Shown: positions 47,431 through 59,703 of the stretch, one piece after another
Layout: the number at the start of each line of letters is the position of its first letter
How positions within the stretch are numbered: the stretch's first letter is position 1
IMG/VR virus record: IMGVR_UViG_3300033145_003233
Coordinates: 124,001-188,000 of that record
Strand: one strand, 5' to 3'
Length of the DNA stretch: 64,000 bases
Position numbers and translations under genes: made by a program
Notes under the pieces: generated by a model
Told to the model about the DNA's origin: nothing
Databases searched by the model: none
What the model saw: the letters and a program-made list of their open reading frames with translations, nothing else

Positions 47431-47687
47431 TCTCTGCGTCCTTTAATCTTTGGTTTTCTGTCATATGAGATATTGCTTTTATACAAATTTCATCTGTATC
47501 GGCTGGTAATCCTAAATCTTCGAGCATCGCTGCCCAAATTACCTTACTCTTACAATCTTCTTTATATATTGTTCCATTCATTCCACTTTTCCTTATTATA
47601 ACCTATTTTCTACCTTACGTCAAGAAAAAATTACTTGTCTGGAAATTAATAACTTAATCCTTCTTTCACTTTCAAGTGTTATTTAAC

Positions 47688-47757
47688 AGGTCGCTAGGGG
47701 TACGATCCCTAAACTGAACTTTTGGAGAGTCCTGTGATGCCAATTTCACCAACGACC
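47688..47757 (-). tRNA. tRNA-Trp(CCA)
   Basis: cloverleaf, GGACT-CTCCAAA-AGTTC. Confidence 0.85.
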
Positions 47758-47763
47758 TATAAT

Positions 47764-47836
47764 ATCCCCGGAAGGACTTGAACCCTCACAAACCCAGATT
47801 CGTAGTCTGGTGCTCTGTCCATTTGAGCTACGGGGA
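47764..47836 (-). tRNA. tRNA-Arg(ACG)
   Basis: CCAGA-CTACGAA-TCTGG. Confidence 0.9.
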
Positions 47837-47843
47837 CAATAAA

Positions 47844-47917
47844 CGCCCATAGTAGGACTCGGACCTACATTTTTCGCCTTAGGAGGGCGATACCTTATCC
47901 ATTTAGGCTATATGGGC
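47844..47917 (-). tRNA. tRNA-Arg(CCT)
   Basis: TCGCC-CTCCTAA-GGCGA. Confidence 0.85.
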
Positions 47918-47925
47918 ATATAAAC

Positions 47926-47953
47926 AAAACGCTTCTAGTGACAAACTAGAAGC
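47926..47953 (-). terminator. intrinsic terminator-like hairpin
   Basis: GCTTCTAGT/ACTAGAAGC. Confidence 0.55.
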
Positions 47954-48018
47954 ACATCGTTTGTAGAAGTCCTAATCTCAACCAAAAGGTTGCAAATTAG
48001 CAAATTTTATTAAAAAAC

Positions 48019-48246
48019 CTAGTTACAGGTCTCATCCCCAAATAGTTCTCGATCTTCTGATTCGTCTAAAGTAGCTTTTTGCAAAAAAGCAAAAGCAGCT
48101 AAAATTATAATTGATATCTCTTCATCATTCTTAGCTCCATCTATCAAGATATTTTCTAATCTATCAAGATATTTTCTTGCTTCAGCCCAACTTTCATTGA
48201 CAACTCTTTCACATCTGATCCTATATAAATCTTCTTTTTTAGCCAT
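48019..48246 (-). CDS. hypothetical protein
   Basis: co-oriented ORF. Confidence 0.65.
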   Translation of the reverse strand: MAKKEDLYRIRCERVVNESWAEARKYLDRLENILIDGAKNDEEISIIILAAFAFLQKATLDESEDRELFGDETCN

Positions 48247-48369
48247 CCTTAGATCCCCACAAATAATATAAAAGAACTAGTCAAATATGTAACTATTAAA
48301 AATATAACAACTAATTAAACACTTTCAAGAAAAATCTTATAAATATTATATTTTTTTATATTAGGCCAT

Positions 48370-48403
48370 AAAAAATGCCCAACCTATAAAAAGCTGGGCA
48401 TTT
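48370..48403 (-). terminator. intrinsic terminator
   Basis: AAATGCCCA/TGGGCATTT stem, T run. Confidence 0.65.
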
Positions 48404-48421
48404 GATAGCTCTTAACTAGAG

Positions 48422-48862
48422 CTAAGCAGCGGAGGCAGGGATCTTCCTGCGCTTCCTTTGCCCGCTTTTTTGGAGAACAAAAACTCCTCGACTGGTTTTT
48501 TGTATCTTCCTGTCTCTATTGAGCTTGTTGTTCACCATGGTGTAAAATAGTCGGCTATTCGTGTGGTACAAATCCTGTTTCCGTATTGAAGATAGGACAT
48601 CCTGCATCGTCATCTTCTTACCAGGAACCATACTTTTTCGAATTGCGTCTCTCAAAATGACTGTATTATGCATCCTCGGCACATAACTCTTTATCCCCGC
48701 TGACTTAGAATTACGAGCTAAATAACGGGAAAGCCTTCTTTGCACCTTAGAGATCTGACGATCCATCTGTTCTTTCTGCCTTAGCAAGTCCTGTAAAGTT
48801 TGATAGTAGGCCTCTTCAGTTCTTACCGAGGCGTCCTTTCCCACTTTCTTCGTCTTCGGCAT
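48422..48862 (-). CDS. basic coiled-coil plus winged-helix-like DNA-binding protein
   Basis: start trimmed to MPKTKK; C-terminal MTMQDVL..SRGVFVL. Confidence 0.65.
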   Translation of the reverse strand: MPKTKKVGKDASVRTEEAYYQTLQDLLRQKEQMDRQISKVQRRLSRYLARNSKSAGIKSYVPRMHNTVILRDAIRKSMVPGKKMTMQDVLSSIRKQDLYHTNSRLFYTMVNNKLNRDRKIQKTSRGVFVLQKSGQRKRRKIPASAA

Positions 48863-49122
48863 TTTAAAAACTCCCAAAAAAGAAACTAATTTAGTTAAAC
48901 TATACGATAGTCTAGACAAGTATTAATATAACAGATTCTTGTTAGTAGTTCAACTCTTTTCTCTATTTTTCTATCATAGATTATGGATAGGAAATAAAGA
49001 AAATAGATATAACTTGTTAGTCTATAGGAAGTTATGTAAAATGATAAAAGTGGAAATATATTTTATTTTTTGCTAAAGTTTCTTGACAATAGATCCGAAG
49101 AATAATAAGTTCTAATTAAATA

Positions 49123-49163
49123 TCCCCGGTAGGACTCGAACCTACAACATCCAGCTTAGGAAG
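49123..49163 (-). pseudogene. 3' half of tRNA-Arg(CCT)
   Basis: CCTAA-GCTGG..GTAGG-TTCGAGT-CCTAC-CGGGGA; 5' half replaced by ORF end. Confidence 0.7.
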
Positions 49164-49368
49164 ACATTCTAGTAAGTTTCCATTTTTGAATTTTTTTCTC
49201 CATTTTTTCTTCAGCTTCTTCTTTATCTCGACCCCAAGTTTCTCCGAAATCATCTTCTATTTTAGCATCATTACAATACATAGATTGGACTTTGGTAACA
49301 TAATAATATCTATTGCCAATTGGTGGTAACAATTCTCGACTATCTATATAATATTCATACTTATTCAT
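49156..49368 (-). CDS. hypothetical protein
   Basis: GGGAG RBS; stop lies in tRNA-half anticodon loop. Confidence 0.7.
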   Translation of the reverse strand: MNKYEYYIDSRELLPPIGNRYYYVTKVQSMYCNDAKIEDDFGETWGRDKEEAEEKMEKKIQKWKLTRMSS

Positions 49369-49397
49369 TATGTTCTCCCTTGATTATACAAATGAAA

Positions 49398-49474
49398 CAC
49401 CTCAGGTAGGGATCGAACCCACATGTGTCCATTTACCCTTTCATCTGCTTAGAAGGCAGAGGGGATACTGAGGC
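49398..49474 (-). tRNA. atypical tRNA-Arg(TCT) lacking a normal D-arm
   Basis: acceptor GCCTCAG/CTGAGGT, TCTGC-CTTCTAA-GCAGA directly after a 7-nt connector, T-arm GTGGG-TTCGATC-CCTAC. Confidence 0.75.
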
Positions 49475-49479
49475 AAAAC

Positions 49480-50172
49480 CTAACTTTTTACCCATTTTCT
49501 TATTGAGTTATCAGAAACACCATATTTCCTACCAACAGCACAATAGTTAGTTTCTTCTATTTCTTGTAACAACCGTTCTTTAGACGGTCTATTTTTAACT
49601 TTTCTTTGTTCTATATCGACACAGTTTTTACACATATCTAATATAGAATATTTTTTTATTTCTTTTCCACATTTTTTACAATTATGCTTTTTTCTATTTT
49701 TTCTTCCAGCAAAAGTTTCTTGTTGACTATTGCAATTAGGACATAATAATCTTAAATTTTCTAATCTATGATCATTATTAACTCCATTTATATGATCTAA
49801 AACCATTACTAAATTTTGATTGTTATGAATTGGTAATTGATTACAAATAACACATCTATTTTCTAACATCCCATTTTGTAATAATCTTTTTTTAAGATTT
49901 CCTCTATCATAAGTAGAATTCTCTATCATAGCCTCTTTCAAAGGAAGAGATCTTTCTGGAAATTTTCTGTTTTTATTACTATTTAAACCTAGAGATATAT
50001 GAGAATAATCGATACTTTCTTCATCCAGTCTTTTTTTTAAAGCCTTATAATTACTACCTGCTATAACTAAATCAAAATACCTAATAATGGCAGCAATGCT
50101 ATCACTTTTAGCAACTATATTCTTTAATTCTTCGGTAGATATGCCCCAGATTATACTTGTTCTTTTTCTCAT
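49480..50172 (-). CDS. HNH endonuclease
   Basis: LDHINGVNNDHRLENLRLLCPNCNSQ; C-terminal HTH. Confidence 0.9.
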   Translation of the reverse strand: MRKRTSIIWGISTEELKNIVAKSDSIAAIIRYFDLVIAGSNYKALKKRLDEESIDYSHISLGLNSNKNRKFPERSLPLKEAMIENSTYDRGNLKKRLLQNGMLENRCVICNQLPIHNNQNLVMVLDHINGVNNDHRLENLRLLCPNCNSQQETFAGRKNRKKHNCKKCGKEIKKYSILDMCKNCVDIEQRKVKNRPSKERLLQEIEETNYCAVGRKYGVSDNSIRKWVKS

Positions 50173-50278
50173 CTCATTTTCTCCTATATAAATAACTTCT
50201 ATCTATATATTCGAGATAAAAGCCAGGACTCCTTTAATAAAATATTATATCCTCCTAATAAATAATAGAAATAAAAAA

Positions 50279-50350
50279 TACTCCTACAGAGAATCGAACT
50301 CTGATCTTCAGGGCGAAAACCTAATATCCTAACCGTTAGACGACAGGAGC
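50279..50350 (-). tRNA. tRNA-Glu(TTC)
   Basis: TTAGG-TTTTCGC-CCTGA. Confidence 0.85.
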
Positions 50351-50354
50351 AAAA

Positions 50355-50436
50355 TGCGGCTGAGAGGAGTCGAACCTCCACGCCTTGCGGCACAAGATTC
50401 TAAATCTTGCGTGTCTGCCAGTTTCACCACAACCGC
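50355..50436 (-). tRNA. tRNA-Leu(TAG)
   Basis: CAAGA-TTTAGAA-TCTTG, variable arm. Confidence 0.92.
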
Positions 50437-50441
50437 TTAAA

Positions 50442-50513
50442 TACGGGATACCGGACTCGAACCGATAGCTCCGACTTGGAAGGACGGCATGTTACCAATT
50501 ACACCAATCCCGC
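50442..50513 (-). tRNA. tRNA-Gly(TCC)
   Basis: CCGTC-CTTCCAA-GTCGG. Confidence 0.88.
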
Positions 50514-50520
50514 TTAATTT

Positions 50521-50643
50521 ACAGATAGGTAAGGATTTGCACCTTACAATTCTAATTTAGGGATGTTAGAATCTAACACGGGCAGGATAAATTAACTACC
50601 CCTTAGCACCCACATAATATTTACCTATTTCACCACTACCTGT
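50521..50643 (-). ncRNA. expanded tRNA-like RNA
   Basis: acceptor ACAGGTAG/CTATCTGT, D-like TGGTGAAATAGGTAAA, T-arm TAAGG-TGCAAAT-CCTTA; about 45 extra nt centrally. Confidence 0.6.
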
Positions 50644-50647
50644 CTAA

Positions 50648-50718
50648 AGGCCGATGAGGGAATCGAACCCTCTTACACACTTTTGCAGAGTGCGACCTTG
50701 CCAATCGGACAATCGGCC
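50648..50718 (-). tRNA. tRNA-Cys(GCA)
   Basis: GCACT-CTGCAAA-AGTGT. Confidence 0.88.
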
Positions 50719-50719
50719 A

Positions 50720-50793
50720 TGGGGTGATCGAGGGAATTCGAATCCCTACTCGCAGGATCACAACCTGCTGTGCTGCCATTACACCACGACCAC
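50720..50793 (-). tRNA. tRNA-His(GTG)
   Basis: G-1 and CCA encoded; GCAGG-TTGTGAT-CCTGC. Confidence 0.92.
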
Positions 50794-50795
50794 AA

Positions 50796-50876
50796 TGCCA
50801 GAAGGTGGATTTGCACCACCAAGACCTCTCGGCCACAGTTTTACAGACTGCTTGGCTCACTAATGCCTGCCCTGAC
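50796..50876 (-). tRNA. tRNA-Tyr(GTA)
   Basis: GCAGT-CTGTAAA-ACTGT, variable arm. Confidence 0.85.
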
Positions 50877-50880
50877 GGAA

Positions 50881-50952
50881 TACCCCCACCTGGAATCGAA
50901 CCAGGAACTCAAGGTTAAGAGCCTAGTATTTTCCCAATTAAACTATAGAGGC
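50881..50952 (-). tRNA. tRNA-Lys(CTT)
   Basis: CTAGG-CTCTTAA-CCTTG. Confidence 0.85.
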
Positions 50953-50955
50953 GCA

Positions 50956-51462
50956 TTAAAAGTTAAATAGATTCCTATAATAATTAGGATCCTTCATTTT
51001 TATCTCATCTTCTATTTCTATATGGCAATTTGAACAATACATATCACATTTATTAAATTCTTCAAGTATTGTCTCCCATTTTTTCGACCAAAGATTATTA
51101 ATTGTTAATCCAAAATTCTTTTGAGAAGGATCTCGATGATGAAATACCAATGCTTTAACATTCTTTTTATATCCACATCTTTTACAAGAGCCTCCCGCTT
51201 TTGCTACTAATTCTTGCTTTTTATTCCATCCTCTTTTATATATATTCCCTCTATGTTTTTGTTTAGATTCTTCACTCCAACAATAATAAGGCCCTTTTTT
51301 CTTAGCAGGACGACTAGGATCATCAGATTTTGTATTATGACCTCTATAGGGAGAACATTTTAAACAAAATTTTCTATTTCCAAGGTTCTTATTTTTTCCA
51401 TCAATTTTTGTCCAGTGAGGGATATATTCCCCACATTTTCTGCAATCTCTTTTATTACTCAT
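50956..51462 (-). CDS. HNH endonuclease
   Basis: CKRCGY..ALVFHH..KCDMYCSNCHIE. Confidence 0.88.
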   Translation of the reverse strand: MSNKRDCRKCGEYIPHWTKIDGKNKNLGNRKFCLKCSPYRGHNTKSDDPSRPAKKKGPYYCWSEESKQKHRGNIYKRGWNKKQELVAKAGGSCKRCGYKKNVKALVFHHRDPSQKNFGLTINNLWSKKWETILEEFNKCDMYCSNCHIEIEDEIKMKDPNYYRNLFNF

Positions 51463-51554
51463 TGCATATCTCCTATAAAATAACTCTTATAGAAGATATA
51501 TTCTGTAACTTAATTAAAACTCCTCTTTCTATTTACTTTTTAAGTTACAATGAA

Positions 51555-51639
51555 TGAGGGTAGGAGGATTCGAACCTCCAGCGTCCTTACGGATCCGGGT
51601 TAAAAGCCCGGTGCAGCCTACCGTATCTGCAACACCCCC
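51555..51639 (-). tRNA. tRNA-Lys(TTT) with long variable arm
   Basis: CCGGG-CTTTTAA-CCCGG; 15-nt variable region with TCC-GTAA-GGA hairpin. Confidence 0.85.
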
Positions 51640-51776
51640 TATATTTTACCTGATTTCTCTTGTTTTCGTTTCATGAGAATTTTCCTTTCTATTCTCTTTA
51701 AGAAGAATAATTAAATTTGAACAACTAACTCCTCCAGCCGCAAAACCCATACTAAACCAAAAGAGAGGATGAATTA

Positions 51777-52190
51777 GTCAATTACCTCCACCATAAAGGT
51801 GGAGGCTTGTAATTAGCGTCAGGATGACGCTACTACAATAGGCTGATTGACATCAGCCTTACTAAGGTAACATATAGTATCTTAGTAATGTTCTTTAACT
51901 AATTATAAGGATTCACTAATTACAACCGTTAACTCTAATTTAGAGTGTCTTACCTGCCGTAGGCAGGAAAGTGACTTATAAGGGCCTGTGAGTTTTACTT
52001 TAACAAGATTTGTTAAAAACTCCATACTCTTAACTTTAAAAAGAACTATTATATAATTCGTCAGAAAGTAGTTAAAACCTTTAAGAAAATGATAATTTTA
52101 GAAAAAATAAGTTTTGAGATACTTCGTCAGCCTTTGGCTGACTTAATGTCTCATTCCTCCCCTCCCACAAGAGAAGGGGTTTCCTGAGAC
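51777..52190 (+). mobile_element. non-autonomous IS200/IS605-family (IscB/TnpB-type) remnant
   Basis: starts GTCAATTA-CCTCCACC-ATAAA-GGTGGAGG-CTTG; ends CATTCCTCCCCTCCCACAAGAGAAGGGGTTTCCTG; no ORF inside. Confidence 0.6.
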
Positions 52191-52292
52191 CCGATTAATG
52201 AAGACACAAAAATAGCTGTAACTCCTATTGTAATAAGACTACTAAACATAACAGTACTTATAAATAAAGAAATAATTCGTTTCCGTTCCATA

Positions 52293-52580
52293 CTAATCTC
52301 CTTTCTTCCATAATTTTTGTAAAAATCTTATTATTTTATTAGAAGGTTTTTGAGCTTTTATCACCTCTACTATATCTGTTATATTCTTTTTTTGTCTAAA
52401 AATCTTATCACATTCTGGACAATATCTTTCGTGCAAATGAGTTTTCATTCCCCAACAAGATATAGGGATTTTTGTATGCATAGTATTTTTATTACCACAT
52501 AAAGGAATATTCCCCTCAGCAACATGATAGAAAAAACTGCTATGAATACTTTCTCTTATAACTAAATCTTTTTCACTCAT
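52293..52580 (-). CDS. hypothetical protein
   Basis: H..C..C..C motif. Confidence 0.7.
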   Translation of the reverse strand: MSEKDLVIRESIHSSFFYHVAEGNIPLCGNKNTMHTKIPISCWGMKTHLHERYCPECDKIFRQKKNITDIVEVIKAQKPSNKIIRFLQKLWKKGD

Positions 52581-52759
52581 AGATCTTCTTCTTTAATTTC
52601 TTTGCCTTTACAAGTAAAAATAATTACATCAGTTAATAATGGACAATCAGGAGGAAGATCATTATAGCTAGATGCTGTTTTTGTAATATTACATCTTGGA
52701 CCAGAAACCCCATATCCTTCTAAGAAACATTCTCCACAATTTTCTACTTCTATTTTCAT
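52577..52759 (-). CDS. Cys-rich hypothetical protein
   Basis: CGEC..C..CP. Confidence 0.68.
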   Translation of the reverse strand: MKIEVENCGECFLEGYGVSGPRCNITKTASSYNDLPPDCPLLTDVIIFTCKGKEIKEEDL

Positions 52760-53269
52760 TTATTCTAATCCTTTCTTTACTACATCCCAATCTATATGAC
52801 TCCATTTCTGATCTTTTGATTGTTCTAATAATGACTCAGCTCTTTTATTCCCATATGATAAGATTCTTTCAGCATGTTCTTCCGGTGTTATCTTCTTAGG
52901 TGCTTTATAAGGAGGAAGGCCTAAAGCCCTATTTATCTCAGGTTCTTTTTTGAGAGGTGCTCGTGCCTTTTTTAAGATCTTCTCTTTCTCTTCCTTTTCA
53001 TCTTTTTCTTTTTTCGCCGAAACAAAATCAAAACCACACCCTGGGCATTTCTTTGTAACTCCTCCTATAATGATGTTACATTCTGGGCATTTCTTTCTTC
53101 CTTGTCCCAAAGATGTATAAATTTTAGGGGCTACTACCTTATTCTTTTCTTTTAAAAGATCTTCTCTTATCTGTTTTGTGGGGAAATGATATCCACAACT
53201 ACAAAGAGAACTTCTTGCTCCTAATTCGGTGTGACAATTAGGACAATCTTTTTTACCTCTACCTGACAT
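52760..53269 (-). CDS. double zinc-ribbon protein
   Basis: GRGKKDCPNC..CSCG and GQGRKKCPEC..CPGCG. Confidence 0.8.
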   Translation of the reverse strand: MSGRGKKDCPNCHTELGARSSLCSCGYHFPTKQIREDLLKEKNKVVAPKIYTSLGQGRKKCPECNIIIGGVTKKCPGCGFDFVSAKKEKDEKEEKEKILKKARAPLKKEPEINRALGLPPYKAPKKITPEEHAERILSYGNKRAESLLEQSKDQKWSHIDWDVVKKGLE

Positions 53270-53414
53270 TGTTAATCTCCATTATTATTCGGTGCTAATA
53301 AGATAGATATTAGTCCCTACAGGAATGGTAGTTCATCCTAATATCTACACTATTTCCATTATAACTTGATTGATAGGGGCTATAAGTCCCTAGGTCATAA
53401 TGACCATCTTCAAT

Positions 53415-53924
53415 CTAATATAATGAAAAAACAGTTGTCTGGAAAATAAATGGAAATTCTGCTTTTAAATCGTTTCTAAAAACAGTATTATATTTAAAAT
53501 TAGTGGTAAGAATGATAACAGGTATTATTATGTATATGGATACAAATAGAATAAGAGGAAAAAAGTTGTCTCCTTTCTTTTTTTTATTATCATAACAATT
53601 ATCTCGAAAACATATTATATTCCATAATAATAAAAATACACAAAATATTGTATATAAAACCCAGGCTGTCTCATCGTCCATAGGCAAATCCCCCGGAGAA
53701 TCGATCCAGCTAATAACAGGCAACCAACTCCCACATAAAAAAGATACTATTATAGCTCCTATAATAGATCCCTTAAATAAGCTATAATAGTATTTCATTT
53801 CTCCTTTTACTTCATTAGCCATTATTCTTCTACGTTTGATTTTCTCCGCTTCTTTAAGGATCTTTGCTTCTTTAAGGATCTTTCTAACTTCTCTTACATT
53901 TTTTTCCCACCAGCTCTCACTCAT
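53415..53924 (-). CDS. multi-pass membrane protein
   Basis: three hydrophobic helices; reads through repeat copy 53437. Confidence 0.7.
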   Translation of the reverse strand: MSESWWEKNVREVRKILKEAKILKEAEKIKRRRIMANEVKGEMKYYYSLFKGSIIGAIIVSFLCGSWLPVISWIDSPGDLPMDDETAWVLYTIFCVFLLLWNIICFRDNCYDNKKKKGDNFFPLILFVSIYIIIPVIILTTNFKYNTVFRNDLKAEFPFIFQTTVFSLY

Positions 53925-54011
53925 GCTCTTATCCCCATTAAATTATTATTTCATAAATAGTTATTCATCCTATATAGTTATTATAGAAAAACAATTGTCT
54001 GGAAAATTAAA

Positions 54012-54087
54012 TGGGTCCTCTTGGATTTGAACCAAGGATATCCAAGTTATGAGCTTGGTGCTTTAGGCCAGGCTAAGCTAAGAACCC
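54012..54087 (-). tRNA. tRNA-Met/Ile2(CAT)
   Basis: CCAAG-CTCATAA-CTTGG. Confidence 0.88.
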
Positions 54088-54094
54088 AAAGAAG

Positions 54095-54167
54095 TGGTAC
54101 TCCCCGGAGTCGAACCGGGTCCTCAAGATTTTCAGTCTTGCGCTAAATCCACATCAGCTAGAGCACC
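54095..54167 (-). tRNA. tRNA-Phe(GAA)
   Basis: CAAGA-CTGAAAA-TCTTG. Confidence 0.9.
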
Positions 54168-54630
54168 TTTTTTGTAGATAATGAACTTCTGCATGACAAT
54201 TCTTACAGAGTAAATCACACTTTTTAGCTTCTTTCTCGAGTCTCTCCCATTTCAATAACAAACCCGAATTGCTAATTGACATCTCTTTTTCTTCTGGATC
54301 TCTATGATGAAAATCCATACTAGCAATACATTTATTATATCCACATTTTATACATTTACTTCCCTGTAACTCTATTAGAGCTTTTTTTCTTTCTTCTCTT
54401 TTATTTTTTTGATAAGACCAATATTTTTTTCTATTGTTATCTTTTTTTCTTCTGTTTTTATTGATCTCGAATTCTTGGAAAGTTTCTCCATATCTACACA
54501 GCTTAGCATGATTCCCACTCCCAAAAGGAGAACAATTAAGACAATATTTTCTCCTTTGCATATTCCTTTGTTTTCCATCAATCTTGACTTTAGTTTTAAA
54601 TTCTTCTCCGCATAATTTACATGTTTTCAT
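54154..54630 (-). CDS. HNH endonuclease
   Basis: CIKCGYNKC..MDFHH..KCDLLCKNCHAEVH; stop overlaps tRNA-Phe 5' end. Confidence 0.88.
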   Translation of the reverse strand: MKTCKLCGEEFKTKVKIDGKQRNMQRRKYCLNCSPFGSGNHAKLCRYGETFQEFEINKNRRKKDNNRKKYWSYQKNKREERKKALIELQGSKCIKCGYNKCIASMDFHHRDPEEKEMSISNSGLLLKWERLEKEAKKCDLLCKNCHAEVHYLQKRCSS

Positions 54631-54710
54631 TTTTATACCTAGATTAACAGTCGCTCTAGATATATTCGATATAATAGCTCAAAAACCTTTAATTAATAAA
54701 AACTGTTTTA

Positions 54711-54782
54711 AGCTCCCTGCCGGAATCGAACCGACTTTTCTGGAGTACGAAACCAGTAGATCACCATTTATCCTTAGGAAGC
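54711..54782 (-). tRNA. tRNA-Thr(CGT)
   Basis: CTGGT-TTCGTAC-TCCAG (one mismatch). Confidence 0.75.
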
Positions 54783-54784
54783 AA

Positions 54785-54856
54785 AGCCGATGAGAGGAGT
54801 CGAACCCCCATTCCCTGATTACAAAACAGGTGTCTTAGCCATTAGACGACAGCGGC
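54785..54856 (-). tRNA. tRNA-Thr(TGT)
   Basis: CCTGT-TTTGTAA-TCAGG. Confidence 0.82.
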
Positions 54857-54888
54857 ATGATTAAAAACTTTTACCTTCAGCATATCTT

Positions 54889-55458
54889 TTATAATTTATC
54901 TAGCATTTCTCTTGGAGTTAAATGAAAAAAAGAAAAAACCCATTTTCCATTTTTTAAATATAAATGTCTTTTTACATGACAATTCTTACAAATTATTTCA
55001 AAATTTTCCATAACATTATTTGTTCTATCTTTATCTTTATGATGAACTTCCAAAAGATACTCTTTATCTTCTGAACATCCTTCACAAACAGGATTTATAT
55101 GATTTTTTATTAACTTTCTATATATCTCCCTACCTTGAGATGTTCCATAATGAGAAGGTCTTATTTCAGGACAATTCCCTTTTAGACTTTGTGATTTTTC
55201 TTTACATTTCCTTGAGCAAAAATGGAAACCATATTTTGAATTTTTAAGCTTAGATGGAGGTCTTTCTATCTTATTATTACAATTATAACAATAAACCGTA
55301 ATCCTATTTTTACGACTTATATCATGACATTTTTTATTACAATATTTTTTAGGCTTAGAAGCATTTTTTCTTCTTAAAAATTCTTTTCTACAATATTTAC
55401 AACTATGTTTTTCTGCTCTTCTTTTTTCCCCAGATTCCATAATAAATAATTGTTCCAT
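54889..55458 (-). CDS. HNH endonuclease with CxxC repeats
   Basis: LEVHHKDKDRTNNVMENFEIICKNCHVKRH. Confidence 0.88.
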   Translation of the reverse strand: MEQLFIMESGEKRRAEKHSCKYCRKEFLRRKNASKPKKYCNKKCHDISRKNRITVYCYNCNNKIERPPSKLKNSKYGFHFCSRKCKEKSQSLKGNCPEIRPSHYGTSQGREIYRKLIKNHINPVCEGCSEDKEYLLEVHHKDKDRTNNVMENFEIICKNCHVKRHLYLKNGKWVFSFFHLTPREMLDKL

Positions 55459-55541
55459 TTAAATCTCCTATAAAATAGATATCTAACTATTATATATTCA
55501 ATATAAATGGGAGGAATCCTTCATTGCATTGCAAATTTTAA

Positions 55542-55614
55542 TGGAGACTGAGGGTTATGATCCCTCTACTGAACTTTGCAAGAGTTCTGTGATACCCGAT
55601 TTCACCAAGCCCCC
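55542..55614 (-). tRNA. tRNA-Ala(TGC)
   Basis: G3:U70; GAACT-CTTGCAA-AGTTC. Confidence 0.88.
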
Positions 55615-55645
55615 AAAGTAGCACCGCCTAAGCAGTGCTACGTTT

Positions 55646-55775
55646 GTAGATGTGTGTGAGCAAATAAGGATTTAGCGTGCTGCCATTACACTATAGGATT
55701 GATCTCTCAATCCTAGCAAGATTCGAACTTGCTCTGCTCGTTCCGTAGACGATAACTTATTCACATTCAACCTAC
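55646..55775 (-). ncRNA. circularly permuted tRNA-Arg(ACG)-like RNA
   Basis: order: anticodon arm, T-arm, acceptor 3' strand, GAGA loop, acceptor 5' strand, D-arm; termini complementary. Confidence 0.8.
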
Positions 55776-55779
55776 GTAA

Positions 55780-55854
55780 TCGGAGTATCCGGATTTGAAC
55801 CGAAATTATTCCTGGCCCCAAACCAGGTGCCATACCAAATTAGGCGATACTCCG
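55780..55854 (-). tRNA. tRNA-Pro(TGG)
   Basis: CCTGG-TTTGGGG-CCAGG. Confidence 0.88.
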
Positions 55855-55863
55855 TATAATTAA

Positions 55864-55936
55864 TCTGGGCGGAAGGATTTGAACCTTCACCCCCTGGCTC
55901 CAGACCAGGAATGCTGCCAAGTAACACTTCGCCCAG
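55864..55936 (-). tRNA. tRNA-Pro(TGG), second copy with atypical loop (C33, A37)
   Basis: CCTGG-TCTGGAG-CCAGG. Confidence 0.75.
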
Positions 55937-56002
55937 GACAGACAAAAACTCCATAGCTATGAAACTATGAAGTTTTGTCTAATATTAACATTTGTTTAAG
56001 AA

Positions 56003-56077
56003 TTGCGGGAGGTGGATTTGAACCACCGACCTTCAGGTTATGAGCCTGACAAGCTAACCAAACTGCTCTACCCCGCT
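56003..56077 (-). tRNA. initiator-type tRNA-Met(CAT)
   Basis: 1:72 mismatch, GCGGGGTAGAGCAG, TCAGG-CTCATAA-CCTGA. Confidence 0.9.
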
Positions 56078-56093
56078 ATGTTTTTAATAATAG

Positions 56094-56204
56094 TGTACAG
56101 GGTAGGATTTACACCTACATTTTTTCACAACAACGATAAATCACTACTGCAAAACGTCTTAAATAGAAAGGCGAACCAAACTACTTTATTAAGACCACCT
56201 GAAC
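56094..56204 (-). ncRNA. expanded tRNA-like RNA
   Basis: acceptor GTTCAGG/CCTGTAC, T-arm GTAGG-TGTAAAT-CCTAC, 7-bp D-position stem GTCTTAA/TTAAGAC, GU-rich long stem at anticodon position. Confidence 0.55.
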
Positions 56205-56205
56205 A

Positions 56206-56280
56206 TGGCATCGGGGCATGGACTTAAACCATAGCATCCCATCAGTTAAGCTGATGCGCTTTACATGTAAGCTACCCGAT
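56206..56280 (-). pseudogene. degenerate tRNA, apparent TTA anticodon (probably Asn-derived)
   Basis: CATCA-GCTTAAC-TGATG; G73 and CCA encoded; short acceptor 5' strand. Confidence 0.6.
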
Positions 56281-56286
56281 ATAAAA

Positions 56287-56358
56287 TAGTAGAAACTGGA
56301 GTTGAACCAGTATAATCCTTCTTATGAGAAAGGAGCATTCCCGTTATGCTATTCTACC
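56287..56358 (-). tRNA. tRNA-Met/Ile2(CAT)
   Basis: CCTTT-CTCATAA-GAAGG. Confidence 0.82.
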
Positions 56359-57014
56359 TAGAAAAGCCATTTATCAGAATTATCATTTACATATTCCTTT
56401 ATAGAACCAAAAATTTGTTGAGCAATCTGAGTATTTCCGATAGCAATAGAACAAATACCATAAGGATGTTTAATTTTAGAGGTGCTATAATATTTACTTT
56501 TTAAAGTGCATTTTCTTAAACAACTCTTTGGTAATTTTAATTGATTACACCAATAAGTCTGAATCTCTTCTAAAGTTAAACCATTATCAAGATAATATTG
56601 AAAAGTAAGAGCAACATCTTCATTAGCAACCGAAAAATACTTTCTAAGAAAATTAATAAAAAAAGACATCAGCTTAGGATCGCTATTTACTAACCTTACA
56701 TAATTCTTACATTTACTTCCTTCTCCCCAGAATAAAGCACATCCAAAAGCATAATATTGATCTTCTGTCCTAGCTTTTTCTCTTCCCTGTTGTTGATACT
56801 CTCTTCTTTTATTCCTAAAATTCTCAGAATGATTTATATATGCTTTATCTCTAAATTGTAATTTCTTTTTTTGCTTATTTGTAAGGTCAATATCTCTAAC
56901 CCATATACTAACAGAACCTTTAGATACTTTAATTTGTTTTGAAATATTTCTAAGCGACATTCCTTGTTTGCGAAGTTTCCTACATTCTGCTTTTTCTTTA
57001 ATTTTTGCTTTCAT
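56358..57014 (-). CDS. HTH plus LAGLIDADG-like endonuclease
   Basis: N-terminal HTH; YYAFGCALFWGEGSK..NSDP. Confidence 0.72.
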   Translation of the reverse strand: MKAKIKEKAECRKLRKQGMSLRNISKQIKVSKGSVSIWVRDIDLTNKQKKKLQFRDKAYINHSENFRNKRREYQQQGREKARTEDQYYAFGCALFWGEGSKCKNYVRLVNSDPKLMSFFINFLRKYFSVANEDVALTFQYYLDNGLTLEEIQTYWCNQLKLPKSCLRKCTLKSKYYSTSKIKHPYGICSIAIGNTQIAQQIFGSIKEYVNDNSDKWLF

Positions 57015-57372
57015 AATAGAACCCCTTATATATTCAAACTCTTATTAAGCATTCGAAATAAAAGGGTTCATATCCTTTATTTATTTAAAATATATGAAAG
57101 TTGCGTGATATCCCATTTCACTATATTGCTGTGAAATTATTAAAAATTACGGATGTGTTATTGCAAAAAAGCTGGTTTCGGTTTTGATATCGATAACTTT
57201 TTCACTTCAACCCGTATAAATGTCAATTAAACTTTTCATAGGTCAAGTCTATTTTTATTTTAAAGAACCATAAACTACAGTATATAGCATTATACCACAT
57301 CTGCTTTCACTTTCAAGGACTTTTTTATATTTTTCTGAAAAAAGTTATAAACTCTTTTAAAAAAATGACTTA

Positions 57373-57444
57373 TACCCCTACAGAGAGTCGAACTCTGGTC
57401 TTCAGTTAGAGAGACTGATATCCTATCCACTAGACGACAGGGGC
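57373..57444 (-). tRNA. tRNA-Glu(CTC)
   Basis: TCAGT-CTCTCTA-ACTGA. Confidence 0.85.
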
Positions 57445-57450
57445 AAATAA

Positions 57451-57536
57451 CGGAGAGTAATCGAATCGAACGATCAACCAGTAATAGGTTGGGCCAGTTT
57501 TCAAGACTGGGTGGGAACCATTTCCCCCTACACTCC
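57451..57536 (-). tRNA. tRNA-Ser(TGA)
   Basis: CCAGT-CTTGAAA-ACTGG, long variable arm. Confidence 0.85.
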
Positions 57537-57541
57537 ATAAG

Positions 57542-57627
57542 CGGAAAAGACAGGGAACGATCCTGCACTACCCGAAAGTAGGATAGTTTAGCAAACTACT
57601 TGGCACGCCAACCTTGCCAGCTTTTCC
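57542..57627 (-). tRNA. tRNA-Ser(GCT)
   Basis: GTAGT-TTGCTAA-ACTAT, long variable arm. Confidence 0.85.
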
Positions 57628-57691
57628 AAAAATAGGCAAGAGCCGTGTGTAACCCTTTTACTCCCTAACTCTCCTTGTTAGGGAAACCTAA

Positions 57692-57763
57692 CCCCCTCAC
57701 ACGGTTACGATCCGAGTATTTTTGCTCGACAAGCAAATGTGATAGCCAGTTCACTATAAGGGG
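57692..57763 (-). tRNA. tRNA-Asp(GTC)
   Basis: TTTGC-TTGTCGA-GCAAA. Confidence 0.82.
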
Positions 57764-57775
57764 TTAATGAGAACA

Positions 57776-57848
57776 ATATTCAAGGACGAGTCGAACACCC
57801 ATTTCCGGCTTGTTGGCCGGTGCCCTACCATTAGACGACTAAAGTATC
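57776..57848 (-). pseudogene. degenerate tRNA (Val-like)
   Basis: D and T arms recognisable; 6-nt loop CAACAA; broken acceptor stem. Confidence 0.5.
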
Positions 57849-57890
57849 CTCGATATCGTATCTAGAAAAATATATCGGATAGTTCTCAAA

Positions 57891-57965
57891 TGGGCGAGAG
57901 AGGATTTGAACCTCTGACTATTTCCGTGTAAAAGAAACACTCTATCCAGACTGAGTTACACGCCC
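57891..57965 (-). tRNA. tRNA-Val(TAC)
   Basis: TTTCT-TTTACAC-GGAAA. Confidence 0.88.
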
Positions 57966-58086
57966 TAAAAACTATTCGAACTATTATTTTATTTGATATG
58001 AACCATAAAATAATTTTGTATATAAATTAAAGGTTTTTATAAAAATAGTTCGAATATATAATAGAAACATTTATAGGAGAAATATT

Positions 58087-58707
58087 ATGAATAAAGGTCT
58101 TAAAGAAAAAATAATATCATTAAGAATAAAAGGGACTAGTTATCGTCAAATTGCTAAAAAACTAAATTGCTCTAGAGGAACAATTAGCTTACATTGTTCT
58201 AAATTAGAAGAGAATAAAACAATTGAACAATGTAATAGAAAAATGTTGGCTTTTCACCAAAATGAAAGTCTTAATTTTTCAAAAAAAACAATTAGAATCA
58301 TAAAAATACTTTATAATTACGGAATTCAAACTACTGAAATAGCAGATATCCTTAATATAGATATTAGACCAATTAGATCTTTTTGTATAAAACTTCCTAA
58401 AAAAGATTACTCCTTTTTATCAAACTATGAGAAAGTTAAGAGAAGAAGAAAGAAAATTAAAATATTAGGAGTTATCTATAAAGGAGGCAAATGCCAAAAA
58501 TGCGGTTATAATAAATATTTTGAAAATCTAGAATTTCATCATGTAGATCCTAACAAAAAAGAATTTACAATCGCTCAGAAATGTAACCATAGGTGGTTAA
58601 CTATTAAAAAAGAATTAGACAAATGTGTTTGTTTATGTTCAACTTGTCACAGAGAAGAACATATAAAAAAACATATTACAGATATAACACCCATAGATTT
58701 AGAATAG
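58087..58707 (+). CDS. HTH plus HNH endonuclease
   Basis: GGKCQKCGYNK..LEFHH..KCVCLCSTCHREEH. Confidence 0.88.
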   Translation: MNKGLKEKIISLRIKGTSYRQIAKKLNCSRGTISLHCSKLEENKTIEQCNRKMLAFHQNESLNFSKKTIRIIKILYNYGIQTTEIADILNIDIRPIRSFCIKLPKKDYSFLSNYEKVKRRRKKIKILGVIYKGGKCQKCGYNKYFENLEFHHVDPNKKEFTIAQKCNHRWLTIKKELDKCVCLCSTCHREEHIKKHITDITPIDLE

Positions 58708-58775
58708 GATTAATAGGAGTTGAACCTATATACCCGCCTTATCAGGACGGAGCTTTGCCATTAAGCTATAATCCT
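58705..58775 (-). tRNA. tRNA-Ile(GAT)
   Basis: CCGTC-CTGATAA-GGCGG. Confidence 0.88.
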
Positions 58776-58868
58776 AGAAATGGGGAGTAGGCAAACTCCC
58801 CATGGGAATTTACAAAACTTCATTTGTGGCCCTCTTGGACCCCCTATTAACTTTTTATAGATCATAAA

Positions 58869-58967
58869 TCGTAATATCTTACGACTTATATAATATTTCC
58901 TGCTTAAGTCGTAATATCTTACGACTTATATAATATTTCCTGCTTAAGTCGTAATATCTTACGACTT
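58869..58967. repeat. 40-bp tandem repeat (x2.5) containing palindrome AAGTCGTAA-TATC-TTACGACTT
   Basis: three palindromes separated by identical 18-nt linkers. Confidence 0.9.
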
Positions 58968-58969
58968 AG

Positions 58970-59040
58970 CTCCACCACCTAGATTCGAACTAGGACCGAA
59001 GCATTAACAGTGCTCTATGCTACCGTTACACCATGATGGA
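58970..59040 (-). tRNA. tRNA-Asn(GTT)
   Basis: GAGCA-CTGTTAA-TGCTT. Confidence 0.9.
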
Positions 59041-59047
59041 ATTATAT

Positions 59048-59380
59048 TTATTGGTTATAATCTTCTTTGTCATGTAATTCCATATGACATCTACAACATA
59101 ACAAATCACATTTATCTACTTCTTTTTTAAGCCTCTTAAGACTTTTATCATAACTCTTAGCTATTTGTAATTCTTTTTCTTTTTTATCACGATGATGAAA
59201 AGAATAAGCAGCTGGTATACCTTTATTATATCCGCATTCTTGACACTTACCACCCTTGTAAAGAACAAGCTTCCATTTAGTTCTTTTTCGACAATTAATT
59301 ACATTTCTGGATCTTCTTTGCTTTTGATATTCTTCCCACTTTTCTTCTCCCATCTCTGCTCTGCGTTTAGTGATCCTCAT
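59048..59380 (-). CDS. HNH endonuclease
   Basis: GGKCQECGYNK..YSFHH..KCDLLCCRCHMELH. Confidence 0.88.
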   Translation of the reverse strand: MRITKRRAEMGEEKWEEYQKQRRSRNVINCRKRTKWKLVLYKGGKCQECGYNKGIPAAYSFHHRDKKEKELQIAKSYDKSLKRLKKEVDKCDLLCCRCHMELHDKEDYNQ

Positions 59381-59478
59381 TTTTCTCTCCTATATAGATA
59401 ATTTACTATCTATATATTCGATATATAATGATAAACTCCTTTAGTTAACCAATAAATATTTACTTTTTAAAGATCTAA

Positions 59479-59549
59479 CAGCCCCATCAGGGTTCGAACC
59501 TGAGACGCGAGATTCAAAGTCTCGAATGTTACCGCTACACCACAGGGCT
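59479..59549 (-). tRNA. tRNA-Gln(TTG)
   Basis: CGAGA-CTTTGAA-TCTCG. Confidence 0.9.
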
Positions 59550-59703
59550 ATTCGGTGCTACTATCGTCTTTATTCAATTCTTCAAAAAGTTCTTCTACTG
59601 TATCACAAGTAAAAATATCTTTACCAAGATGAGCATCTTCAAAAGCTTGTATTGTCTCAGCATTCGGTACTAAAAATTTTCTTTTTCTTTTTATAGTTCC
59701 CAT
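59548..59703 (-). CDS. RelB/DinJ-like antitoxin C-terminal domain protein (51 aa)
   Basis: PNAETIQAFEDAHLGK..DTVEELFEELN; start trimmed to MGTIK. Confidence 0.65.
   Translation of the reverse strand: MGTIKRKRKFLVPNAETIQAFEDAHLGKDIFTCDTVEELFEELNKDDSSTE

What the first reader, a model, noticed from the sequence alone, without database searches (positions are those of the whole stretch)
51555..51639. tRNA-Lys(UUU) carrying a class-II variable arm
Seen: perfect stems and a UUU anticodon, plus a 15-nt variable region with a TCC-GTAA-GGA hairpin. Known: in bacteria long variable arms are normally confined to Leu, Ser, Tyr and Sec tRNAs, and tRNA-Lys(UUU) is the target of PrrC and PARIS-type nucleases. 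Inference: a nuclease-resistant tRNA-Lys, or a tRNA charged with a different amino acid (missense recoding).
Basis: partly seen in the sequence, partly recalled or inferred. Interest (0 to 1): 0.6.

Follow-up and report, generated by a model that had tools for sequence, protein, structure and literature searches.

The report
Phage lysine tRNA with extra arm
A 548-kb phage carries a well-formed tRNA that reads the lysine codon AAA but is built on the long-armed scaffold normally reserved for tyrosine, serine and leucine tRNAs; it is one of about a hundred such tRNAs found here in other phage contigs, and the arm may help them escape bacterial tRNA-cutting defences, though that is untested.

Summary
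Window 51555-51639 (- strand) is an 85-nt tRNA gene (ARAGORN; Rfam 49.2 bits against a 29-bit cut-off). It has a 7/5 cloverleaf, anticodon UUU, discriminator A73, and a 15-nt variable region with a UCC/GUAA/GGA hairpin.

It is not a one-off. One truncated pattern scan of IMG/VR returned 91 distinct class-II-type tRNA(UUU) genes. All three pairs of the variable stem covary in them. The arm has the architecture of phage tRNA-Tyr, not of Ser or Leu.

Lysine identity is favoured over missense recoding:
- AAA makes up 6% of the phage's codons and interchanges with AAG between orthologues.
- This is the genome's only UUU tRNA.
- Sister tRNAs occur as UUU/CUU pairs on the same scaffold.
- Long-armed Asn, Trp, Thr and His tRNAs in these phages keep their own acceptor hallmarks.

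Nuclease evasion is plausible but only circumstantially supported. Long arms are enriched in Lys, Thr(UGU) and Asn(GUU), the isotypes that published work names as AriB and P2-OLD targets. Class-II Lys tRNAs also keep the nuclease-sensitive anticodon-stem motif more often than class-I phage Lys tRNAs.

A syntenic relative has an ordinary class-I Lys(UUU) in the same slot, and an HNH homing endonuclease gene abuts the tRNA, which suggests replacement. Expression and charging could not be tested.

The parts
51555..51639 (-). tRNA(UUU) gene, 85 nt, 7/5 cloverleaf with a class-II (Tyr-type) variable arm; A73 at 51555; no encoded CCA
   Evidence: ARAGORN; Rfam RF00005 49.2 bits; fold; sequence
51600..51606 (-). 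Anticodon loop CUUUUAA; anticodon UUU at 51602-51604
   Evidence: Sequence; ARAGORN
51595..51611 (-). Anticodon arm CCGGG/CCCGG. It has C39 and C41, and keeps the paired CNG motif (C28-G-G30 and C40-C-G42).
   Evidence: Sequence. The motif and cut sites come from PMC12445682. The T5 resistance positions 39 and 41 come from bioRxiv 10.1101/2025.02.04.636281.
51580..51594 (-). Variable region, 15 nt: one unpaired nt, a 3-bp stem, a GUAA tetraloop, the returning stem, then 4 unpaired nt (CGCU). The hairpin lies at 51584-51593.
   Evidence: Fold; covariation of the same three columns in 28 sequences; architecture table
50956..51462 (-). HNH homing endonuclease gene (168 aa) starting 92 nt downstream of the tRNA; one of four HNH genes scattered through the tRNA array
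   Evidence: PHROG phrog_2255, E 2.8e-26; ORF list
50881..50952 (-). Class-I tRNA-Lys(CUU), 72 nt; the only other Lys tRNA in the genome
   Evidence: ARAGORN
47686..59550 (-). Array of 27 tRNA genes in which the tRNA(UUU) sits. It is syntenic with the array of a related 351-kb phage contig, whose Lys(UUU) is class I.
   Evidence: relative L254

Best explanation
This is a working elongator tRNA of a 548-kb phage that decodes AAA, most likely as lysine charged by the host LysRS. It is built on a class-II, tyrosine-tRNA-type scaffold.

It belongs to a widespread set of phage tRNAs in which isotypes that are normally class I carry a short GNRA-capped variable hairpin. The set includes Lys UUU/CUU, Thr UGU, Asn GUU, Trp and others.

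In this phage the gene probably replaced an ordinary class-I tRNA-Lys(UUU) at the same array slot. The adjacent HNH homing endonuclease gene may have been involved.

The most likely benefit of the arm is a changed shape at the junction of the anticodon stem and the tRNA core. With that change, host tRNA nucleases that cut the anticodon arm of tRNA-Lys(UUU), such as OLD/AriB-type Toprim enzymes, would bind or cut it poorly.

Shown: gene, structure, family, covariation, synteny, codon use. Inferred: lysine charging, acquisition route, nuclease evasion.
For: Gene and structure.

Family:
It yielded 104 tRNA(UUU) genes of 82-94 nt, 91 of them distinct.
- In 28 aligned members, 96.3% of cells pair against 64.8% in shuffles (0 of 500 shuffles reach the observed value). 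All three variable-stem pairs show compensatory changes.

Scaffold type:
- Architecture is given as (5' unpaired, stem, loop, 3' unpaired). Class-II Lys is (1, 3-4, 4, 3-4), as in phage tRNA-Tyr (1, 3, 3-4, 3-4).
- Leu is (0, 4-5, 4, 1) and Ser is (1, 5-7, 4, 1).
- BLAST of the window tRNA hits phage tRNA-Tyr genes. An unannotated tRNA-Tyr of Xanthomonas phage X1 has nearly the same anticodon arm and start of the arm.

Lysine identity:
- The tRNA has U34, U35, U36 and A73.
- It is the only UUU tRNA among the genome's 29 tRNAs.
- No class-II aaRS core (PF00152) is found in the phage.
- AAA is 6.06% of codons.
- Own AAA aligns to AAA or AAG in 32 of 41 DnaE positions of a relative that has a canonical tRNA-Lys.
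- Within loci, class-II Lys(UUU) is most similar to long Lys(CUU), at mean 0.71 and maximum 0.875 identity.
- Long-armed Asn, Trp, Thr and His tRNAs keep their own acceptor and discriminator hallmarks.

Replacement:
- The relative (DnaE 72% identical) has a syntenic array with a 76-nt class-I Lys(UUU) of unrelated sequence in that slot.
- The HNH gene starts 92 nt downstream of the tRNA.

Nuclease link:
- AriB targets Lys(UUU), Thr(UGU) and Asn(GUU), cuts between positions 40 and 41, and contacts the D-loop.
- P2-OLD cuts after C28 and C40 and prefers Thr(UGU), then Lys and Asn.
- Long arms are enriched in Thr(UGU) 10/34, Asn 10/50 and Lys(CUU) 11/61, against 33/673 for the other isotypes (OR 5.3, p 3e-9).
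- Class-II Lys keep the paired CNG motif in 68/90, against 19/39 for class-I phage Lys (p 0.004). They keep U39-C40 in 60/90 against 10/39 (p 2e-5).
- The phage has Rnl1-type and Rnl2-type RNA ligase genes.
Against: - No expression, CCA-addition or charging data: no sequencing run was listed.
- The host is unknown, so 'resistant relative to the host tRNA' cannot be judged.
- The arm is not conserved even in the nearest relative found. That relative also has Leu tRNAs without arms and an initiator-like Met with one, so arm gain and loss may be loosely constrained in these phages.
- In 68 loci sampled through ordinary Ser(UGA) tRNAs, 0 of 12 Lys(UUU) and 0 of 15 Thr(UGU) were long. The form is therefore a minority.
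- Long arms also occur in Trp, Cys, Val, Met and Gly, which the two cited papers do not list as main AriB/OLD targets.
- From memory, class-II synthetases such as LysRS2 approach the tRNA from the variable-loop side, so a long arm could hinder charging.
- A73, U35 and a Tyr-type arm leave some room for TyrRS.
- U15/U48 and a G where A21 is usual are atypical.
- The enrichment statistics ignore relatedness among phages.
Confidence: 0.55

Rival explanations
1. It is a functional tRNA-Lys, but the long arm has no dedicated role. Large-phage tRNAs tolerate gain and loss of variable arms, and this version drifted or hitch-hiked in with a homing-endonuclease cassette.
For: - The nearest relative has a class-I Lys(UUU), three Leu tRNAs of 73-74 nt without arms, and a 91-nt initiator-like Met with an arm.
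- Long arms turn up in many isotypes.
- The form is a minority in an unbiased sample.
- HNH genes are scattered through the array.
Against: - The arm has a uniform architecture with GNRA-type loops and compensatory changes across 91 distinct genes. That indicates purifying selection on the hairpin.
- The isotype distribution is strongly non-random.
- The arm correlates with retention of the nuclease-sensitive stem motif.
Confidence: 0.25
2. It is a missense or dual-identity tRNA. The Tyr-type body with A73 and U35 is charged, at least partly, by TyrRS (or by LeuRS or SerRS), so AAA is read as another amino acid.
For: - The arm is Tyr-type and the nearest BLAST hits are phage tRNA-Tyr genes.
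- A73 and U35 are shared by the Tyr and Lys identity sets (my knowledge).
- The best pairwise match inside the genome is tRNA-Leu(UAG), with 58 identical positions.
- Acidobacterial Ser-like missense tRNAs are known (PMC5389517), and a 95-nt G73 example with UUU was seen in a Terracidiphilus MAG.
Against: - AAA is 6% of codons and is synonymous with AAG across orthologues.
- G34 and A36 of the Tyr anticodon are both absent.
- The arm is unlike the Ser and Leu types, and the discriminator is not G73.
- UUU/CUU paralogue pairs occur on the same scaffold.
- Other long-armed isotypes keep their own acceptor hallmarks.
- The acceptor branch is 7/5, not 8/4 or 9/3.
Confidence: 0.08
3. It does not act in translation. 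It is a decoy that binds or occupies a tRNA nuclease, or a decaying gene copy.
For: - The AriB preprint raises competition by over-expressed viral tRNAs as a possibility.
- The tRNA has atypical U15/U48 and a G where A21 is usual.
- Other degenerate tRNA-like sequences lie in the same array.
Against: - All stems are intact, and U8, A14, G18G19, U33 and the UUCGAAU T-loop are present.
- It is the only AAA reader in an otherwise near-complete tRNA set of an AT-rich phage.
- The acceptor stem covaries in the family as expected for a chargeable tRNA.
Confidence: 0.1

Closest known systems
Phage T5 tRNA-Lys(UUU), the PARIS/AriB-resistant viral tRNA (Nature 2024, PMC11464382; bioRxiv 10.1101/2025.02.04.636281)
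   Same: Both are phage-encoded tRNAs with a UUU anticodon sitting in a tRNA array. The window tRNA also differs from the E. coli tRNA-Lys sequence quoted in the AriB preprint at positions 39 and 41, having C39 and C41.
   Different: According to the AriB preprint, T5 resistance comes from substitutions at positions 39, 41 and 16; the searched text never mentions the variable region. Here the distinguishing feature is a 15-nt variable arm, and resistance is untested.
Bacterial and phage tRNA-Tyr (class II)
   Same: Both have one unpaired nt, a 3-bp stem, a tetraloop and 3-4 unpaired nt in the variable region, plus A73 and U35. Xanthomonas phage X1 has a tRNA-Tyr with nearly the same anticodon arm and start of the arm.
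   Different: The anticodon is UUU, not GUA. The D-arm has a 4-bp stem and a 10-nt loop, unlike the 3-bp stem and 11-nt loop of many family members. Within loci it is no closer to Tyr (mean 0.62) than to other tRNAs.
Long tRNA-Lys(CUU) genes annotated in cultured phages: Caulobacter CcrBL9 and CcrColossus, Ruegeria vB_RpoS-V10, Xanthomonas XacN1
   Same: These are 87-89 nt tRNA-Lys genes similar to members of the family, sitting in tRNA arrays.
   Different: Their anticodon is CUU. They share 77-80% identity with other members of the IMG/VR set, not with the window tRNA. They are annotated simply as tRNA-Lys with no comment on the architecture.
allo-tRNAs and tRNA-Sec-like missense tRNAs (Mukai et al. 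2017, PMC5389517)
   Same: Both combine a long variable arm with an anticodon outside Leu, Ser and Tyr.
   Different: allo-tRNAs have 8/4 or 9/3 acceptor/T branches, and Krahn et al. 2020 also describe longer variable arms and anticodon stems for them. I recall a Ser-type identity for them, but the text I read does not state it. This tRNA is 7/5 with A73 and a 3-bp arm.

Membership tests
tRNA (Rfam RF00005) | Cloverleaf scoring above the 29-bit gathering score, with the conserved core nucleotides | tested here: met
   49.2 bits over model positions 1-71. U8, A14, G18G19, U33 and the UUCGAAU T-loop are present.
Class II tRNA | Variable region of 10 nt or more that forms its own stem-loop | tested here: met
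   15 nt with a 3-bp stem and a GUAA loop. The stem covaries in the family. The definition is from PMC7609411.
tRNA-Lys (bacterial identity set) | U34, U35, U36 and A73 in the sequence | tested here: met
   Anticodon UUU and A73. The identity set is from my own knowledge of E. coli work.
tRNA-Lys (bacterial identity set) | Charged with lysine by LysRS | not testable with these tools
   Indirect support only: codon use, AAA/AAG interchange, and UUU/CUU paralogue pairs.
tRNA-Tyr (bacterial) | Anticodon G34-U35-A36 with A73 and a Tyr-type variable arm | tested here: not met
   A73, U35 and the arm type match, but positions 34 and 36 are both U.
tRNA-Ser | G73 and a long variable stem (5-7 bp in these phages) with one unpaired nt on its 3' side | tested here: not met
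   A73, a 3-bp stem and 4 unpaired nt on the 3' side.
tRNA-Leu | A73, a D-arm with a 3-bp stem and 11-nt loop, and a variable arm with no 5' and one 3' unpaired nt | tested here: not met
   Only A73 matches. The D-arm is 4 bp with a 10-nt loop and the arm is (1, 3, 4, 4). The T-arm does resemble the phage's own Leu(UAG).
allo-tRNA / tRNA-Sec-like | 8/4 or 9/3 acceptor/T branch | tested here: not met
   7/5.
Nuclease-resistant phage tRNA (T5 tRNA-Lys type) | Not cleaved by the host's tRNA nuclease while the host tRNA is cleaved | not testable with these tools
   The host and its nuclease are unknown. The tRNA has C39 and C41 but keeps the paired CNG motif.

The most novel reading that the evidence does not exclude
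A long, Tyr-type variable arm is a general, independently recruited countermeasure. Phages would use it to shield the anticodon-stem/core junction of the tRNAs most often attacked by Toprim (OLD/AriB-type) and related defence nucleases, namely Lys, Thr and Asn. This would be a second route to nuclease-proof tRNAs, beside the known anticodon-arm point substitutions.
Probability: 0.3. Interest if true: 0.8.

Novelty: new variant of a known kind. Interest (0 to 1): 0.6.

Why it matters
Textbook tRNA classification ties the long variable arm to Leu, Ser, Tyr and Sec. Here one scan shows about a hundred phage tRNAs that break this rule for lysine. Further ones break it for Thr, Asn, Trp and other isotypes, while keeping their own identity marks.

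If the arm blocks defence nucleases, it would add a structural resistance mechanism to the arms race between phage tRNAs and bacterial tRNases. It would also explain why some phages carry both a class-I and a class-II tRNA-Lys.

If the arm does not block nucleases, these tRNAs are still a natural experiment on how much extra structure LysRS, ThrRS, AsnRS, EF-Tu and the ribosome tolerate. That is useful for tRNA engineering.

The test is simple: charging and cleavage assays with the arm removed or grafted.

Tried and rejected
- Alternative genetic code. Coverage by long ORFs is 0.858 under code 11, and rises only to 0.897 with TAG read through and 0.896 with TGA read through, with no region rescued. 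I kept the standard code.
- Close DNA relatives in cultured phages. None was found for the tRNA with flanks or for neighbouring genes. No exact relative of the tRNA core was found in IMG/VR, and only three contigs share its anticodon arm.
- The PARP-like neighbour as a probe for related phages gave no relative. DnaE worked instead.
- Phage-encoded LysRS. No PF00152 match. Class-I LysRS (PF01921) was not searched.
- Terminase_6N and RtcB searches of the genome found nothing.
- Recent duplication of the phage's own Tyr, Ser or Leu tRNA. The best internal match is only 58 identical positions, to Leu(UAG), and across loci similarity to Tyr averages 0.62.
- The ARAGORN register for the variable stem (CGU/ACG) was rejected on covariation.
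- Expression. No public run was listed.
- Bacterial genomes. Of 120 pattern hits, only 13 are ARAGORN calls of tRNA(UUU) of 82 nt or more. Five lie in dense tRNA arrays, three are actinobacterial singletons, two or three look like artefacts of intron-bearing or duplicated class-I tRNAs (L201, L208, L234), and the rest are singletons. Most other hits are chance or intron-bearing archaeal tRNAs.
- A negative-control scan with the Phe loop mostly returned ordinary tRNA-Ser(UGA).
- Ten literature searches found no paper on class-II-type tRNA-Lys in phages.
- The big protein searches, structure prediction and complex prediction were not needed.

Full report

Yes. ARAGORN finds 27 tRNA genes on the - strand of the window, among them tRNA-Lys(ttt) at 51555-51639. 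Rfam's tRNA model scores it 49.2 bits against a 29-bit cut-off, over the full model, and places the extra bases as an insertion in the variable region. The minimum-energy fold is a cloverleaf with a fifth small hairpin.

Read from the sequence:
- The acceptor stem has 7 bp, with G2.U71 and G7.U66 wobbles.
- U8 is present. The D-stem has 4 bp and the D-loop has 10 nt, with G18G19.
- The anticodon stem is CCGGG/CCCGG and the loop is CUUUUAA.
- The variable region has 15 nt: A, UCC, GUAA, GGA, CGCU.
- The T-stem has 5 bp with a UUCGAAU loop. The discriminator is A73 and no CCA is encoded.

**2. Where does it sit?**

The window is bases 124001-188000 of a 547,943-bp IMG/VR virus record that CheckV rates complete. 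The genome is 33.6% G+C and uses the standard code: reading TAG or TGA through rescues no region.

The genome has 29 tRNAs. This one is the only UUU tRNA, and the only other Lys tRNA is a class-I CUU 600 bp away. AAA is 6.06% of codons and AAG is 2.58%.

Other genes relevant to tRNA biology:
- No class-II aaRS core (PF00152) is found.
- The phage encodes an 842-aa protein with the domains of a CCA-adding enzyme, which fits tRNA genes without CCA.
- It encodes a Ro60/TROVE protein.
- It encodes an Rnl1-type and an Rnl2-type RNA ligase.

The array is interrupted by four HNH homing endonuclease genes. One of them (50956-51462) starts 92 nt downstream of this tRNA.

**3. It belongs to a large family.**

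I scanned IMG/VR for the UUU loop followed 22-32 nt later by a common T-arm motif. ARAGORN found 104 tRNA(UUU) genes of 82-94 nt in those loci, 91 of them distinct.

The commonest variable region, in 27 sequences, is exactly the window's design: one unpaired base, a 3-bp stem, a tetraloop (mostly GAAA, GCAA or GUAA), the returning stem, then four unpaired bases.

On an alignment of the window tRNA with these 27:
- 96.3% of cells form pairs, against 64.8% in shuffles (0 of 500 shuffles reach this).
- Sliding the partners by one to three columns drops pairing to 35-50%.
- The three variable-stem pairs are 94% paired, and each shows double changes, for example GC, UA, AU and CG at one pair.

**4. 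What kind of arm is it?**

I measured arm architecture as (5' unpaired, stem, loop, 3' unpaired). In the same phage loci:
- Class-II Lys tRNAs are (1, 3-4, 4, 3-4).
- tRNA-Tyr is (1, 3, 3-4, 3-4).
- tRNA-Leu is (0, 4-5, 4, 1).
- tRNA-Ser is (1, 5-7, 4, 1).

The window tRNA is (1, 3, 4, 4), which is the Tyr type. Its best BLAST hits among cultured phages are tRNA-Tyr genes at weak E-values. An unannotated second tRNA-Tyr of Xanthomonas phage X1 has nearly the same anticodon arm and start of the arm.

Within loci, however, class-II Lys tRNAs are not recent copies of the local Tyr gene (mean identity 0.62). Their closest partners are long tRNA-Lys(CUU) genes (mean 0.71, up to 0.875).

**5. Which amino acid?**

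This cannot be measured here. Indirect evidence favours lysine.

(a) The sequence has the LysRS marks I know from E. coli work: U34, U35, U36 and A73. It lacks G34 and A36 of Tyr, G73 and the long stem of Ser, and the arm and D-arm type of Leu.

(b) AAA behaves as a lysine codon. In DnaE, own AAA aligns to AAA (28) or AAG (4) of 41 positions in a relative that has a canonical tRNA-Lys, and own AAG aligns to AAA (11) or AAG (8). There is no drift towards Tyr, Leu or Ser codons.

(c) UUU/CUU paralogue pairs on the same scaffold make sense only if the anticodon defines the meaning.

(d) Other long-armed tRNAs in these phages keep isotype hallmarks:
- Asn has U1-A72 and G73.
- Trp has A1-U72 and G73.
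- Thr has G1-C72 and C2-G71.
- His has C73.

The arm is therefore an add-on to the scaffold, not an identity switch. A tRNA that inserted something else at 6% of codons would damage every protein.

**6. How did it get here?**

A contig whose DnaE is 72% identical has the same tRNA order. At the slot between Phe and Lys(CUU) it carries a normal 76-nt tRNA-Lys(UUU) with an unrelated sequence.

The class-II version in the window is therefore a replacement, not an in-place insertion. The abutting HNH gene is a plausible vehicle, but this is inference.

The same relative has three Leu tRNAs of 73-74 nt without arms and a 91-nt initiator-like Met with one. Arm length is evidently labile in these phages.

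**7. Why a long arm?**

Published work in the library shows the following:
- PARIS AriB cuts E. coli tRNA-Lys(UUU), Thr(UGU) and Asn(GUU) between positions 40 and 41 and contacts the D-loop. T5 tRNAs escape through substitutions at positions 39, 41 and 16.
- P2-OLD cuts after C28 and C40 in paired CNG motifs. It prefers Thr(UGU) and also cuts Lys(UUU) and Asn(GUU). Phage tRNAs escape through altered motifs and shorter stems.
- Neither paper mentions variable arms.

In my data:
- Among isotypes that should be class I, long arms are concentrated in Thr(UGU) 10/34, Trp 6/28, Asn(GUU) 10/50 and Lys(CUU) 11/61. The other isotypes total 33/673 (OR 5.3, p 3e-9).
- A separate scan shows long Thr(UGU) to be abundant too: 79 of 119 hits.
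- Class-II Lys tRNAs keep the paired CNG motif in 68/90 and U39-C40 in 60/90. Class-I phage Lys tRNAs in the same loci keep them in 19/39 and 10/39 (p 0.004 and 2e-5). This is as if the arm made stem substitutions unnecessary.
- The window tRNA itself keeps the CNG pair but has C39 and C41.

Together with the phage's RNA ligases, this fits an arms race over tRNA cleavage.

The caveats are substantial:
- The counts ignore relatedness between phages.
- The loci were selected for class-II Lys.
- Long arms also occur in Trp, Cys, Val, Met and Gly.
- In loci sampled through ordinary Ser(UGA) tRNAs, 0/12 Lys(UUU) and 0/15 Thr(UGU) were long.
- The host is unknown.

**8. Is it known?**

Long tRNA-Lys(CUU) genes of 87-89 nt are present and auto-annotated as 'tRNA-Lys' in Caulobacter phages (CcrBL9, CcrColossus and relatives), Ruegeria phage vB_RpoS-V10 and Xanthomonas phage XacN1. 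Long Asn and Glu tRNAs occur in Klebsiella phage phi1_175008, and an unannotated one occurs in Pseudomonas phage Astolliot. The sequences are therefore in databases.

Ten full-text searches found nothing that describes or explains the architecture. I also read the tRNA-identity review, the Mukai allo-tRNA paper and the review of non-canonical tRNAs.

In bacterial and archaeal genomes the same pattern gave only 13 ARAGORN calls of tRNA(UUU) of 82 nt or more among 120 hits. Five lie in phage-like tRNA arrays, three are actinobacterial singletons, and two or three look like artefacts.

**9. Verdict.**

This is a real, well-formed phage tRNA(UUU) on a Tyr-type class-II scaffold. It is one member of a widespread and apparently undiscussed set.

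My estimates:
- Lysine decoding of AAA: about 0.7.
- A role of the arm in escaping anticodon-arm nucleases is the best functional guess: about 0.3-0.4.
- Neutral lability of the arm is the main rival.
- Missense recoding is unlikely.

Noticed in passing
window 50797-50877 (-): A divergent 81-nt tRNA-Tyr(GUA) between tRNA-His and tRNA-Lys(CUU), missed by default ARAGORN. It has three G.U pairs in the acceptor stem, a UGCAAAU T-loop and a GGCC/GAGA/GGUC arm. It would complete the phage's set of 20 amino acids.
   Followed up: partly
window 49398-49474 (-) and 57777-57845 (-): Two sub-threshold tRNA-like sequences. The first scores 30 bits in Rfam, has an Arg(UCU)-like loop, an odd D region and a long variable region. 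The second scores 23 bits and has a 6-nt anticodon loop. They may be decaying or unusual tRNAs.
   Followed up: partly
window 46126-47430 (-): A 434-aa protein with WGR, PARP regulatory and PARP catalytic domains (E 1.8e-27), that is a eukaryote-style poly(ADP-ribose) polymerase architecture in a phage. No relative was found in IMG/VR by the word-based locus search.
   Followed up: partly
window 44655-46058, 49480-50172, 54154-54630, 54889-55458 (all -): One LAGLIDADG and three further HNH homing endonuclease genes in and beside the tRNA array. This recalls SegB in the T4 tRNA cluster.
   Followed up: partly
L254 (IMGVR_UViG_3300024259_002152, 326500-339500): The related phage has tRNA-Leu(UAG, UAA, CAA) of 73-74 nt with Leu-type D-arms but no long variable arm. 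It also has a 91-nt initiator-like tRNA-Met with a long arm, and a tRNA with a 6-nt anticodon loop.
   Followed up: partly
G000:C1 225.4-229.9 kb, 241.4-242.0 kb and 289118-291649 (outside the window): An Rnl1-type RNA ligase gene lies next to a Ro60/TROVE gene. The genome also has an Rnl2-type ligase and an 842-aa protein with PolyA_pol head and HD domains, like a CCA-adding enzyme. Together these look like an RNA repair and quality-control kit.
   Followed up: partly
L121 (Klebsiella phage phi1_175008) 1752-1836 and 2537-2625; L120 (Pseudomonas phage Astolliot) 1479-1565; L119 (Xanthomonas phage X1) 1476-1566: Cultured phages carry long-armed tRNA-Asn (85 and 87 nt) and tRNA-Glu(UUC) (89 nt, A73). 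The Astolliot Asn and the second X1 Tyr are not annotated in GenBank.
   Followed up: partly
L186, L199, L200 (Actinomycetota, Frankiales and Mycobacteriales MAGs); L162 (Thalassovita litoralis): Class-II-type tRNA(UUU) genes occur as singletons in cellular genomes. The Thalassovita one has a Leu-type D-arm. Whether they lie in prophages was not checked.
   Followed up: no
viral loci L373-L491: Long-armed tRNA-Thr(UGU) is also abundant in IMG/VR (79 of 119 pattern hits). Phages that have it often carry other long-armed tRNAs too: Asn 11/47, Lys(UUU) 6/28, Cys 7/24, Val(UAC) 7/25.
   Followed up: partly
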